From Oikopleura dioica (Eukaryota > Animalia > Chordata): a stretch of 64,000 bases of DNA. Shown here piece after piece: positions 46,193 through 50,552 of this stretch (the first letter of the stretch is position 1; every line of letters starts with the position of its first letter). The notes under the pieces were generated by a model. The model was not told where the DNA came from, searched no databases, and worked only from the letters and a program-made list of their open reading frames with translations. Location of the stretch: contig OU015567.1 of NCBI GenBank assembly GCA_907165135.1, positions 7,998,001 through 8,062,000 on the forward strand, in the 5' to 3' direction. The position numbers and the translations under genes were made by a program.

Positions 46193-46829
46193 AAAACTTC
46201 CCCTTCAGCGATTCCAAGCACATTTGAACTACTGTAAAAGATAACTGCCTTCTCACATGATCTTGCTTTTACTGTAATAAGAATGTCTTTTGGAATATAC
46301 GGTAACGATATTGAACCGAAATTGAAGTTATAAATACGCAGGATAAAGGATAATCCTTACTCATAAATATCATGCAGAAAATAATAACAAAGGTAATACT
46401 TACATCCATATGATTTATGTGACATAAAGTAGTTGCTCATAATTACGTTATGAAAGATACGGTATGAAGAAAGAATGTCTGTATGCATGAACTGGCTTGT
46501 GATGCAAAGATGAGCGAATTCGAATTCCTGAAGGGAAAATCCGTTGTGATTTTGAAAACGCGCGCATTTTCGGTCGAAAACTTGATGAGTCGGCTTTCTG
46601 CTGCGTCGATTTCGCAACTTTTTGGTTGTCTCCAGCACTGGTTGCCTAATTTTCAAGCGAGTCGACTCAGTCGAGGAATGATTTCTTGCGGCGGGCCGCT
46701 CGTGGCGCCAATGAGCCTTTTCCTCTCGTGCTTCTCAGCCGACGCTATAAAAAGGCCTGCAAACCCAGAATTTCATCATTCCATAAGTTTTCAAAAATCT
46801 AACTTTTTGATTACAAGTCAACTCAAAAG

Positions 46830-47219
46830 ATGGCAAAGACAGTTCAGAAGCGAGGCCGAGGACGCCCAAAGACAAAAAACACCAGCTCGGTGAAAACTCC
46901 AGAAGAGTTGAAGAAAGCCCAGCGCGAGCTTCGATTCAAGAAGGTCAACTTCAGTCACTACATCTACAAGGTGCTGAAGCAAGTTCACCCCGACACCGGC
47001 ATGTCCAGCAAGGCGATGAGCATCATGGATTCCTTCGTCCACGACCTCTTTGACCGCCTGGCCGCTGAAGCTTCCAGTCTCGCCAAGAAGAACAAGCAGT
47101 CAACGATCTTGGCTCGAGACATCCAATCAGCTGTTCGGCTCATCATTCCTGGCGAACTCGCGAAACATGCTATTTCCGAGGGAACCAAAGCCGTCACCAA
47201 GTACAATGGCTCTCGTTAA
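46830..47219 (+). CDS. Divergent histone H2B variant with N-terminal AT-hook-like motif
   Basis: [42 protein letters not shown]...[29 protein letters not shown], with KRGRGRPK in the tail. CCAAT and tataaaa upstream. Confidence 0.95.
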
Positions 47220-47951: not shown

Positions 47952-50552
47952 ATGAGAACAAGACAAGCTAACAGAGGCAAATTCAACGGAGGACCAAGGT
48001 CGTTTGACGGAGCTCCACCACGAGGGAGAGGACGAGGTCGAGGACGTGGCTATTTCAGCGGAAGACCACGCCAGCCCCTGACCCACGTACGTCTCGGATC
48101 ATGTCTCTTTCTTCAACTTTTATTTCAGGCTGGATATGTGACTCCCTACCGAAACATTCCACCGTCGCAGAGAGATCTCCTGTGGGGCCCACAAACGCAC
48201 TACAGTGATGGAATTCGTCGGTTCTACACGAGCTTCAAGACGAATCGCAACGACGCGAAGCTCCTCTGCGGCGAGATCAACATGGATATGAAAAGGAGGG
48301 AAGATACCAAAGCGGAGAAACAAGTGCTTTGGTTCACCGAGGTCGGAAGAGAAGATGATGCCGAGAAGCCCGATGAAGAGCGAGAACTTATCATTATCTG
48401 TGAAGAAACCAGCGCCGGGCCGACAAGAATCTTCAACTTCCTATCAAAGAAGTACCCGACACTCGGCTTGGTAGAAGTTCCAGTGGATCAGAAAGCGCTG
48501 GCAGGACGGAAAGCAGCCCTTCGTGCGGAGAAGAGTGGAGCAGGCCTTCAAGCAGGCACAAGCCGCTTTTTAAATCGAGAGAGGAAGGACGAGAGGAATG
48601 AAAGATACACAGAAGCGTTCAAGGAAAGGTGCATGAAACAATATCACGAACGAAAGCAGCGTATCCGGTCTGAGCGAACAAATGACTCTGGAATGGAGAC
48701 TGAGACGTCATCGAGCGACGGAAAAGCGGCAAATGAATCTGAACGAAGGGAAAGCACTGATGTATTCTCGGCATTCGGAAGTTCTGGATCAGCTGTTCAC
48801 GATACCGAGATGGAGACTGAAGACGACCTGGACGGCTACACGACGTTTTGACTAAACCGACGTTCTCGCTAACCGACGTTTTCGCTAAACCGACGTTCTC
48901 ACCAAAAGTCAAAACGTCGGTTTAGTCAAAACCTCGGTTTAGTCAAAACGTCGGTTTTCCCTAAAAATGCGGGGGCAATCAGAGCGAATGAGAACATGCT
49001 CTTCCTGGATTAAAAATTCTGTCTGAAGCCCGCCGTCTTTTTCAAACCGAAATTTTCCTTAAATTGTTAACTTGGAAAAACAAAATATATATTTTTTAAT
49101 TTATTATTTTAAAATTATTATTTGAATAACAAAATCAATAAGTTTAAAAAATATTAAGTCTGCATAATTTACTTATCTTTTTACATTTTATCGGTCTTGA
49201 GATCATTTTTAAAAGATTTATTTTAGTTATATTAGTTAATTTAATGAAGATATTCATTATTCTTATACTTTTACTCTTCACAAAGATCTTTCAAAAGATA
49301 ATGAAAACGTCGGTTTGACGAGAACAACGGTTTCCAAACTGAGTCTTAACCAAATTCAAGGCGCCCACGCATTTTTAAGGAAAACCGACGTTTTGACTAA
49401 ACCGATGTTTTGACTAAACCGACGTTTTGACTTTTGGTGAGAACGTCGGTTTAGCGAAAACGTCGGTTAGCGAGAACGTCGGTTTAGTCAAAACGTCGTG
49501 TAGCCGACCTGGACTTCACTGAGGAAGTGGGAAGTTCAATCATTACAAAGGTGAAGCCCCAGCCAGCTCATGGCGTCAGTCGTCGTCTTCCAACGCCTCC
49601 AGCTGCCGATGATGGATCCTCAGTCAAATCTCGCGTAAGTTCAGAAGAGAATTTATCTTCTTTTTTCATTTAAATTTACTGGTCATTCCTTTGTAGTTTC
49701 TCTGCTACGCGATCAAGAGAGAATGGGATCTGTGCAAACGCGGCGATGCTCTCCTCAACGAGTTCTTCGACGATGCAGAGCGAATTTGCGATGAAGATGA
49801 AGAATTGATGGACGATTTGCCGAAGAAAATTTGCGAATGGCTTGATGAACCACCATGCCAGCTGCCAAAGATAGAAGAAATCTGGCTTAGATTCGGCCAG
49901 AGGATTCTTCTGAAGACGTATTTCATGACCTACGTGGTCGAGCTTTACGGCGGTTTGATGACGAATGAAGACGAGCGAACTGGCATCTTTAGACGGAGAA
50001 CTCCCGGTGGAACGTTTTACACCATGTTCAAATGCGTCAACATGAAAGAGGATCACTGGATCAGCCGATTCGAGTACTTGAAGAAGCACAGATTCGCCTA
50101 CAAGCACGAACGTGCACGTAAGTACACATTCTTTGAAAGAAAGGTTAATTTTTTATTTTCAGGACTTGGCGAGGATGCCGTTCGAGAACGCACTCAAATG
50201 GCGAAGATCAACGTCGCGAATCTGAAGCGCGAGGGAATGAGCGATTGTCTCTGTGAGTTCGATTACATCTCCATAAAAGATCTGGACCTCGATCACAAAG
50301 ACGATATTCAAGAAATGATCGTCAAAAGGTATTTGTTTCTTCTTAGAAAGTGGCTTCAATCAGTATTCTAGTATGAATAGAATGGAGCTGGATGACGAAC
50401 AAGACGTTCCTCGACCTGCACAGCCTGAAAAGCAATACGACAGTAGCGCCTCAGAATGGTCCGACGAAGAGTGTTACGATGACCCCTTCGGCTACGCCCG
50501 TGAAGCACAGCGACAGCGTGAAGCACAGCGACAGCTGTACCAGGATAACTGA
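47952..50552 (+). CDS. Hypothetical RG-rich/acidic protein whose coding exon is interrupted by a MITE; start uncertain
   Basis: Frame ...ETEDDLD (48833) resumes in frame after the element as FTEEVGSSIITK...VKSR. GT-AG introns then join further open exons ending ...REAQRQREAQRQLYQDN* at 50552. Confidence 0.65.
48834..49505. mobile_element. Mutator-like (MULE/foldback) MITE inserted in a coding exon
   Basis: Exact 9-bp TSD gacctggac (48825-48833, 49506-49514). TIRs of about 140 bp start ggctacacgacgttttgactaaaccgacg and are built from ~17-bp aaaccgacgttttgact subrepeats around an AT-rich core. Confidence 0.92.

What the first reader, a model, noticed from the sequence alone, without database searches (positions are those of the whole stretch)
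48825..49514. Mutator-like MITE in a coding exon with termini positioned for in-frame splicing (candidate introner)
Seen: the 672-bp element with a 9-bp TSD sits inside an open exon and introduces TGA at 48849-48851. Its termini read G|GCTACAC...GTGTAG|CC, placing a GC at positions 2-3 and an AG ending three bases from the end. Removing 48835-49503 (669 nt) as a GC-AG intron leaves G+CC plus the 9-bp TSD, 12 nt in total, giving ...EDDLD-A-DLD-FTEEVGSSII..., in frame with the downstream exons. Because the TIR is symmetric, the same donor/acceptor pair and 12-nt scar would arise in either orientation and any codon phase. Known: TE-derived introns (introners) co-opt terminal splice sites, and Oikopleura tolerates non-GT donors. 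Inference: either an intron caught at birth from a frame-preserving MITE family, or simply a truncating allele. The acceptor lacks a good polypyrimidine tract, so splicing is unproven.
Basis: partly seen in the sequence, partly recalled or inferred. Interest (0 to 1): 0.75.

Follow-up and report, generated by a model that had tools for sequence, protein, structure and literature searches.

The report
Transposon splitting a PHAX-like exon
A small cut-and-paste transposon sits inside a protein-coding exon of a conserved gene in the tunicate Oikopleura dioica; it could in principle be spliced out like a newborn intron, but nothing here shows that it is, and a gene-breaking variant carried by one animal is at least as likely.

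Summary
A 672-bp non-autonomous transposon (48834-49505) has 143-nt inverted ends, a perfect 9-bp target duplication (GACCTGGAC), and six sister copies elsewhere in the genome. It interrupts exon 2 of a four-exon, 590-codon gene with a PHAX RNA-binding domain and puts a TGA five codons into the element. Three relatives from environmental sequence read straight across the site, so this is an insertion into conserved coding DNA.

A second copy, in another single-copy gene, shows the same result in the opposite orientation and a different codon phase.

The "introner" reading is not supported beyond that:
- The GC donor and AG acceptor are weak.
- 76 other in-frame G*-AG pairs lie within about 60 nt upstream of the element start to 60 nt past its end.
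- Sister subfamilies end GTGTATCC or GTGTAACC and have no AG.
- No RNA could be examined.
- The assembly is a haploid mosaic of one male with about 3.6% heterozygosity.
- The superfamily moved recently.
- A second, canonical-looking PHAX gene exists.

This scan has flagged similar transposon-in-exon cases elsewhere in this genome. Transposon-derived introns are already reported in larvaceans. Verdict: a real insertion, splicing unproven, modest interest.

The parts
48825..48833 (.). Target-site duplication, copy 1 (GACCTGGAC)
48834..49505 (.). 672-bp non-autonomous DNA transposon (MITE), GGC-end subfamily. AT-rich core with no ORF longer than 57 aa.
48834..48976 (.). Left terminal inverted repeat, 143 nt. 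Built of 17-nt sub-repeats (AAACCGACGTTTTGACT-like) and itself a foldback (-60.9 kcal/mol).
49363..49505 (.). Right terminal inverted repeat, 143 nt, 97.9% complementary to the left one. Itself a foldback (-70.1 kcal/mol).
49506..49514 (.). Target-site duplication, copy 2 (GACCTGGAC)
48849..48851 (+). In-frame TGA brought in by the element, five codons past the insertion point
48835..49503 (+). Arithmetic verified, use not shown.
47952..48086 (+). Exon 1 of the host gene (ATG at 47952; RG-rich N-terminus, similar in L072)
48087..48128 (+). Intron 1, 42 nt, GT-AG
48129..48833 (+). Exon 2, part upstream of the element (235 codons). 36-40% identical to P0001 and L072. The last ~40 codons are a poorly conserved acidic linker.
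49506..49634 (+). Exon 2, part downstream of the element (includes TSD copy 2). The motif DFTEE..IITKVKPQPAHGVSRRLPTPPAADDG is 67-81% identical in relatives.
49635..49696 (+). Intron 2, 62 nt, GTAAGT...TAG. The junction is confirmed by the continuous ORF of L072.
49697..50328 (+). Exon 3, PHAX RNA-binding domain (PF10258, 30.1 bits, cut-off 25). 50% identical to L072 and 98% to the environmental protein P0003.
50329..50371 (+). Intron 3, 43 nt, GT-AG (inferred from frame)
50372..50552 (+). Exon 4, acidic tail and TGA stop

Best explanation
Shown: a 672-bp non-autonomous cut-and-paste transposon inserted into exon 2 of a conserved, single-copy PHAX-domain gene. The genome matches Oikopleura dioica OKI2018_I69. 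The element has 143-nt foldback TIRs, a 9-bp TSD and no coding capacity. It landed at the border between a variable acidic linker and a strongly conserved motif. As the DNA stands, the reading frame ends five codons into the element, upstream of the RNA-binding domain.

Inferred: this is most likely a disruptive or at best leaky insertion allele, probably still polymorphic. It would have been captured because the assembly is a haploid mosaic of one very heterozygous male. It is probably not an intron produced by a transposon family built for frame-preserving splicing. Unspliced transcripts would carry a premature stop.
For: - Insertion anatomy and family.
- Coding context and collinear relatives without the element.
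- Weak signals: the donor cg|GCTACA matches 3 of 8 consensus positions. It lacks the AG|G.A flanks reported for Oikopleura non-GT donors (PMC7072748). The acceptor has 6 of 14 pyrimidines. 76 in-frame alternatives exist.
- The pre-mRNA would fold into a ~140-bp stem (-338.8 kcal/mol, z -29) with both proposed sites at its base. Each TIR alone is also a stable hairpin.
- A 669-nt intron would be more than 10 times the 49-nt median intron.
- The terminal AG is absent from the sister subfamilies.
- The superfamily moved recently: a 99.7% identical pair has different TSDs.
- The sequenced animal had about 3.6% heterozygosity, and its haplotypes were merged into one reference (PMC8008620).
- A second, canonical-looking PHAX gene exists at C4:12275673.
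Against: - This copy has 10 private substitutions, and no two copies of its subfamily are closer than 2.5%. If the insertion were as old as the subfamily, a null allele of a conserved gene should not have survived. Cut-and-paste movement weakens this argument, because it separates sequence age from insertion age.
- All downstream exons and splice sites are intact.
- 2 of 7 GGC-end copies lie in single-copy coding exons, against 0 of 26 elements with AG-less ends (Fisher one-sided p about 0.04). The exon test is insensitive and the numbers are small.
- Intron gain by transposon insertion is on record for Oikopleura (Denoeud 2010, as cited in PMC3443670 and PMC3296678).
- The site precedes a variable linker boundary, where four extra residues would probably be tolerated.
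Confidence: 0.5

Rival explanations
1. Intron at birth, exactly as proposed. The U2 spliceosome uses GC at element positions 2-3 and the AG ending 3 nt before the element's end. It removes 48835-49503 and leaves a 12-nt (A-D-L-D) in-frame scar. The GGC-end subfamily would then be self-neutralising in any orientation and phase.
For: - The arithmetic is verified for two independent exonic copies in opposite orientations and different phases.
- 2 of 7 GGC-end copies are in single-copy exons, against 0 of 26 AG-less relatives.
- O. dioica uses G[ACG]-AG introns.
- The terminal 5-7 nt stay unpaired in the local TIR hairpins.
- The scar falls at a variable linker.
Against: - The donor matches 3 of 8 positions, with no AG|G.A context.
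- There is no pyrimidine tract, and the region where a branch site and tract should be is locked in stems.
- The AG depends on one base of one small subfamily.
- The intron would be more than 10 times the median length.
- There is no RNA evidence.
Confidence: 0.12
2. Imprecise rescue by other cryptic sites. Part of the transcripts lose the element through a different in-frame pair and yield a slightly shortened or lengthened protein. One example is the GGAAGT donor at 48777 or the GA donor at 48778, joined to a TTTAG acceptor of the right TIR at 49487 or an AG in the downstream exon.
For: - The best-scoring in-frame pairs use tc|GGAAGT (5 of 8) and acceptors at 49487 or 49523, with a net change of -30 to -66 nt.
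- The right TIR offers (T)TTAG motifs every ~17 nt.
- The deleted residues would lie in the non-conserved acidic linker.
- From my own knowledge, maize Ds and Mu insertions in exons are spliced imprecisely in this way.
Against: All candidate sites are still poor. Acceptors beyond 49514 would delete part of the conserved DFTEE..IITKV motif. No RNA evidence.
Confidence: 0.2
3. Fixed or common loss of function. The Okinawan lineage tolerates truncation of this PHAX-like paralogue because the canonical PHAX gene on C4 covers the essential role. The gene is starting to decay, or is used as an N-terminal 240-residue product.
For: A second PHAX-domain gene with the classic RRLPGGVF motif exists. The truncated ORF keeps the conserved N-terminal 235 codons of exon 2.
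Against: The paralogue is conserved full-length in at least three other lineages. Exon 3 is 98% identical in environmental DNA of the same lineage. No second lesion is present downstream.
Confidence: 0.13
4. Assembly artefact: the element was misplaced during long-read assembly or haplotype merging.
For: The assembly is a merged haploid mosaic.
Against: A perfect 9-bp TSD flanks complete family termini, and the flanks are collinear with orthologues. That is the signature of real transposition.
Confidence: 0.02

Closest known systems
MITE-derived non-canonical introns of the larvacean Fritillaria borealis (Henriet et al. 2019, as summarised in PMC11282704)
   Same: Both involve a larvacean tunicate and short elements with TIRs at lineage-specific positions in coding sequence. 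In both, non-GT boundaries lie at or near the element ends.
   Different: In F. borealis splicing is shown by RNA data, boundaries are mostly AG-AC or AG-AT, and thousands of introns are involved. Here there is one element (two of seven copies exonic), a proposed GC-AG, and no RNA evidence.
Introners of Micromonas and Aureococcus and other eukaryotes (Huff et al. 2016; Gozashti et al. 2022, PMC9860276)
   Same: Non-autonomous DNA transposons with TIRs and TSDs that can become introns on insertion into exons.
   Different: Classical introners number hundreds to thousands. They carry one strong splice site and create the other from the TSD, leaving no or minimal scar. Here both putative sites lie inside the element, both are weak, a 12-nt scar remains, and the family has 7 copies. 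Gozashti et al. do not mention tunicates in the main text.
[quoted passage not shown] 2010, cited in PMC3443670 Table 1 and PMC3296678)
   Same: Same species complex and the same proposed route.
   Different: I could not read the original paper, so I cannot say whether this family or gene was among its cases.
Maize Ds1, Ds and Mu insertions spliced from exons through cryptic sites in their termini (Wessler and colleagues; from my own knowledge, not checked here)
   Same: Transposon termini supply splice sites fortuitously, giving imprecise, partly in-frame removal and leaky alleles.
   Different: A plant system, shown experimentally. Here it is only predicted.
Mutator-like elements (MULEs) and their MITEs
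   Same: 9-bp TSD, long (143-nt) TIRs with sub-terminal repeats, no target consensus. MULE-domain transposase ORFs are present in the genome.
   Different: No autonomous element shares these TIRs, so superfamily assignment stays open.

Membership tests
MITE (non-autonomous class II transposon) | Terminal inverted repeats | tested here: met
   143 nt, 97.9% complementary
MITE (non-autonomous class II transposon) | Target-site duplication of fixed length at independent copies | tested here: met
   9 bp at nearly all of ~33 elements read. Two have 8-bp repeats and two are truncated.
MITE (non-autonomous class II transposon) | Multiple dispersed copies, small size, no transposase | tested here: met
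   7 copies at 93-100% identity plus ~26 related elements of about 590-770 bp (three compound or nested ones reach 1.3-1.5 kb). The longest ORF in this copy is 57 aa.
Mutator/MULE superfamily | TSD of 9-11 bp and long TIRs | tested here: met
Mutator/MULE superfamily | Autonomous relative with MULE transposase bounded by the same TIRs | tested here: not met
   MULE ORFs of 541-596 aa exist, but their TIRs are unrelated and no GGNTACAC terminus lies near them. No Merlin-type (PF12762) transposase either.
Introner / transposon-derived intron | Removed from mature mRNA by splicing | not testable with these tools
No junction-spanning protein exists in the collections.
Introner / transposon-derived intron | Element carries or creates competent splice sites at its boundaries | tested here: inconclusive
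   GC at positions 2-3 and AG 3 nt from the end exist, but in poor context (3 of 8 donor match, 6 of 14 pyrimidines) and inside stable stems.
Introner / transposon-derived intron | Many copies found as introns of unrelated genes | tested here: not met
   Only 2 of 7 subfamily copies lie in single-copy coding exons. No AG-less relative does.
Introner / transposon-derived intron | Lineage-specific position: orthologues lack an intron at the site | tested here: met
   P0001, L071 (genomic, introns retained) and L072 (continuous 564-aa ORF) read straight across.
PHAX family (host gene) | PHAX RNA-binding domain above Pfam threshold | tested here: met
   PF10258 at 30.1 bits against a cut-off of 25 in exon 3. 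The relatives P0003-P0006 carry the same precomputed domain.

The most novel reading that the evidence does not exclude
The GGC-end subfamily is a self-neutralising transposon of a chordate. Its symmetric termini place a usable GC donor and AG acceptor so that every insertion, in either orientation and any codon phase, is spliced out leaving a 12-nt in-frame scar. On that reading, the PHAX-like and RING-like genes each show an intron caught at birth.
Probability: 0.12. Interest if true: 0.7.

Novelty: new member of a known kind. Interest (0 to 1): 0.35.

Why it matters
If RNA data showed clean removal at the element's own ends, this would be a dated, sequence-resolved case of intron birth in a chordate. 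An orientation-independent, frame-preserving mechanism would help explain the high intron turnover of Oikopleura and its taste for non-GT donors. As it stands, the finding adds three things. It describes a small MITE superfamily (GGNTACACGACG ends, 9-bp TSD, about 33 elements). It gives two exon insertions that are good test loci. It also warns that single-animal haploid assemblies of very heterozygous species carry gene-breaking transposon alleles that can look like new introns.

Tried and rejected
- I tried to build splice-site weight matrices from ORF-bridging short introns in the window plus about 175 kb of fetched loci. The first set was swamped by false pairs, and the stricter sets had only 16 acceptors and 10 donors. 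I dropped them and used simple consensus matches instead.
- The word-based protein search with the upstream exon and with the 55-residue downstream piece found nothing. No public protein for this lineage spans the junction.
- The first metagenome scan found nothing. The second, with an alignment, found L071 and L072.
- The search for an autonomous partner failed. MULE ORFs have unrelated TIRs and there is no Merlin-type transposase.
- I first counted a GGA-end element in a type-IA topoisomerase ORF (L035) as an essential-gene exon hit. I rejected that because the ORF is multicopy and a 99.7% identical paralogue has the empty site. The host of L041 is also multicopy. L034 lies in an intron just after a myotubularin exon.
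- Rfam gave only far sub-threshold miRNA-hairpin matches to the foldback TIRs.
- Dating the insertion from private substitutions is unsafe, because cut-and-paste movement separates sequence age from insertion age.
I therefore could not read the environmental contigs that encode exon 3 at 98% identity (P0003, P0008).
- I did not search or fold the joined spliced gene model. Exons were searched one by one by reference. Only local junction translations, from the start of each exon across the junction, were made in scripts to check the frame.
Full report
WHERE WE ARE. The window is G000:C5:7998001-8062000 of a 64,281,565-base genome in 19 contigs. That matches the published Oikopleura dioica OKI2018_I69 assembly: 64.3 Mbp, 19 scaffolds, one Okinawan male (PMC8008620).

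THE OBSERVATION. All the stated coordinates hold.
- GACCTGGAC lies at 48825-48833 and again at 49506-49514.
- Between them lies a 672-bp element, GGCTACAC...GTGTAGCC (48834-49505).
- Its 143-nt ends are 97.9% complementary. They are built from ~17-nt sub-repeats around CCGACGTT.
- The core is AT-rich, with no ORF over 57 aa.
- Reading on from the upstream frame gives ...EDDLD GYTTF and then TGA at 48849-48851.
- The base before TSD copy 1 and the last base of the element are both C. A 10-bp repeat can therefore be drawn, but the invariant family termini fix the TSD at 9 bp.

THE FAMILY.
- A search of the whole genome finds six more copies at 93-96% identity. All have the same GGCTACAC/GTGTAGCC ends, and each has a different perfect 9-bp TSD. 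One copy (L005) has lost 24 nt of its right end.
- A pattern search for GGNTACACGACGTTTT finds about 80 termini, against 8 for the reversed control.
- These termini pair up into about 33 elements, most of about 590-770 bp, with three compound or nested ones of 1.3-1.5 kb. There are three end types: GGC (7 elements), GGA and GGT. Almost all have 9-bp TSDs and no target consensus.
- Several subfamilies are young. One GGT pair is 99.7% identical with different TSDs, so the superfamily has moved very recently.
- Within the GGC subfamily the tree is star-like. Each copy has 6-13 private substitutions and pairwise distances are 2.5-4.6%. That is the same order as the 3.6% heterozygosity of the sequenced animal.
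- No autonomous partner was found. The genome has MULE-domain ORFs of 541-596 aa, but their TIRs are unrelated. There is no Merlin-type transposase.
- "Mutator-like" is therefore a reasonable label based on TSD length and TIR length. It is not a tested membership.

THE HOST GENE. Reading the sequence gives this model:

| Feature | Coordinates | Notes |
|---|---|---|
| Exon 1 | 47952-48086 | ATG at 47952 |
| Intron 1 | 48087-48128 | GT-AG |
| Exon 2 | 48129-49634 | interrupted by the element |
| Intron 2 | 49635-49696 | GTAAGT...TAG |
| Exon 3 | 49697-50328 | PHAX RNA-binding domain |
| Intron 3 | 50329-50371 | GT-AG |
| Exon 4 | 50372-50552 | ends in TGA |

- Without the element and one TSD copy, the CDS is 1770 nt, or 590 codons.
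- Exon 3 carries a PHAX RNA-binding domain (PF10258, 30.1 bits against a cut-off of 25).
- The gene is single-copy at the DNA level.
- A second PF10258 hit at C4:12275673 has the classic RRLPGGVF motif and looks like the canonical PHAX. The window gene is therefore a divergent paralogue.

RELATIVES READ STRAIGHT ACROSS THE SITE.
- The all-against-all protein search with the upstream exon found one real relative, P0001 (197 aa, from an 814-bp ENA contig). It aligns to the upstream part up to its residue ~154. It aligns to the downstream part from residue 154 at 67% identity.
- An alignment-seeded metagenome scan found two more. L071 is genomic, with introns retained. L072 has one continuous 564-aa ORF, so it is mRNA-like.
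- L072 matches the upstream part of exon 2 at 40%, the downstream part at 76% and exon 3 at 50%. It has no break at the insertion site. It is also continuous where the window has intron 2, which confirms that junction.
- The element therefore entered conserved coding sequence. It sits exactly between a variable acidic linker and the conserved motif DFTEE..IITKVKPQPAHGV.RRLPTPP.ADDG.
- Environmental proteins at 98% identity to exon 3 (P0003, P0008) show that the same lineage is present in ENA contigs.

THE SPLICING PROPOSAL. The arithmetic is correct. Removing 48835-49503 gives ...EDDLD-A-DLD-FTEE.

A second GGC-end copy (L002, C4:12510892-12511563) lies in a 330-codon ORF of a single-copy, cysteine-rich RING-like gene. 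It is in the opposite orientation and at codon phase 2. The same rule there gives ...AAN-EPAN-DPEK, again in frame.

Five points weigh against the proposal.
1. The sites are poor. The donor context cg|GCTACA matches 3 of 8 consensus positions. It lacks the AG|G.A flanks described for Oikopleura's non-GT donors (PMC7072748). The acceptor GTCAAAACGTCGTGTAG has 6 of 14 pyrimidines, whereas the gene's own introns end ttatttcag, cctttgtag and gtattctag.
2. From about 60 nt upstream of the element start to about 60 nt past its end there are 76 in-frame, stop-free G*-AG pairs. Several score at least as well. One example is the GGAAGT donor at 48777 joined to the TTTAG acceptor at 49487, for a net -30 nt in the non-conserved linker.
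3. The transcript would fold into a ~140-bp near-perfect stem (-338.8 kcal/mol, z -29) with both sites at its base. Each TIR alone is also a stable hairpin that buries the place where a branch site and pyrimidine tract would be. Only the terminal 5-7 nt stay free.
4. The intron would be 669 nt in a genome whose median intron is 49 nt.
5. The AG is not a feature of the superfamily. GGA elements end GTGTATCC and GGT elements end GTGTAACC. The "design" therefore rests on one base of a 7-copy subfamily.

WHAT SPEAKS FOR TOLERANCE.
- Two of 7 GGC-end copies lie in single-copy coding exons, against none of 26 AG-less relatives (one-sided Fisher p about 0.04).
- The two AG-less elements found in long ORFs sit in multicopy sequences. 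One of them has a 99.7% identical paralogue with the empty site. Another AG-less element lies in an intron next to a myotubularin exon.
- My exon test relies on long ORFs or Pfam hits, so it misses short exons, and the numbers are small. This is a hint, not a result.
- The copy has 10 private substitutions, and the downstream exons are intact. A very old null allele would be unlikely to look like that. A cut-and-paste element carries its old mutations to a new site, however, so this does not date the insertion.

WHAT SPEAKS FOR A SEGREGATING LESION.
- The reference is one of two merged haploid sub-assemblies from a male with about 3.6% heterozygosity.
- The superfamily is recently active.
- A canonical PHAX paralogue exists.
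I did not check that note.

COMPARISON WITH WHAT IS KNOWN.
- Transposon-derived introns are established for Micromonas-type introners.
- They are also established for the larvacean Fritillaria borealis, where MITE-derived introns with non-canonical ends are removed by a modified U2 spliceosome (PMC11282704).
- Intron gain by transposon insertion is credited to Oikopleura itself through Denoeud et al. 2010 (PMC3443670 Table 1 and PMC3296678). I could not read the original paper.
- This scan has already flagged several MITE-in-exon cases in this genome.
- The idea is therefore not new. What would be new is RNA proof of an orientation-independent, frame-preserving GC-AG pair in the element's own termini.

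VERDICT. The insertion is real and well characterised. The introner reading is possible but unsupported by the splice signals and by the family comparison.

| Reading | Probability |
|---|---|
| Disruptive or leaky, probably polymorphic allele | about 0.5 |
| Rescue by other cryptic sites | about 0.2 |
| Fixed or common loss of function | about 0.13 |
| The exact GC-AG intron | about 0.12 |
| Assembly artefact | about 0.02 |

LIMITS.
- No RNA or read-level data were available.
- The joined spliced model was not searched or folded. Exons were handled separately by reference. Only local junction translations, from the start of each exon across the junction, were made in scripts to check frames.

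Noticed in passing
L035 (G000:C2:3741801-3742512), L055 (C5:11365104-11365504), L056 (C1:6526995-6527393): A type-IA topoisomerase-like ORF (PF01131) is multicopy. One copy carries a GGA-end MITE in the conserved GIGTDATH motif, while a 99.7% identical paralogue has the empty site. 81-nt fragments of this ORF lie about 1.3 kb from MULE-domain hits at four loci. That suggests Mutator elements carrying a captured gene fragment.
   Followed up: partly
L031 (G000:C4:12274173-12277298), minus strand: A second PHAX-domain gene with the classic RRLPGGVFIHFL motif, probably the canonical PHAX. The window's gene is a longer, divergent paralogue conserved in several Oikopleura lineages.
   Followed up: partly
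L045 (C1:7776874-7777579) and L047 (C1:16824712-16825417): Two GGT-end elements are 99.7% identical with different 9-bp TSDs. This is evidence of very recent transposition, although no autonomous element with these TIRs is in the assembly.
   Followed up: partly
G000:C5:840184-840275 and G000:C4:5151939-5152019: Mini-elements of 81-92 nt that consist of little more than two facing termini, which is intron-sized.
   Followed up: no
L034 (G000:C1:4829959-4830683): A 725-bp GGA-end element sits about 20 nt inside the intron that follows a myotubularin-phosphatase exon (PF06602, E 1.6e-38). It turns what was probably a tiny intron into a ~770-nt one.
   Followed up: partly
L002 (G000:C4:12510892-12511563): The second exonic copy of the same subfamily lies in a single-copy, cysteine-rich RING/TRAF-like gene, with Pfam hits only below threshold. 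It is also exactly 672 bp, and it shares two derived substitutions with the window copy.
   Followed up: partly
window 46803-47216 (+): An ORF with a histone H2B-like core (…[23 protein letters not shown]…) and a long basic N-terminal extension. Recognised by eye only.
   Followed up: no
window 48834-48976 and 49363-49505: Each TIR is itself a foldback hairpin (-61 and -70 kcal/mol). Both draw far sub-threshold matches to plant and animal miRNA precursor models in Rfam, so they are not credible miRNA genes.
   Followed up: yes
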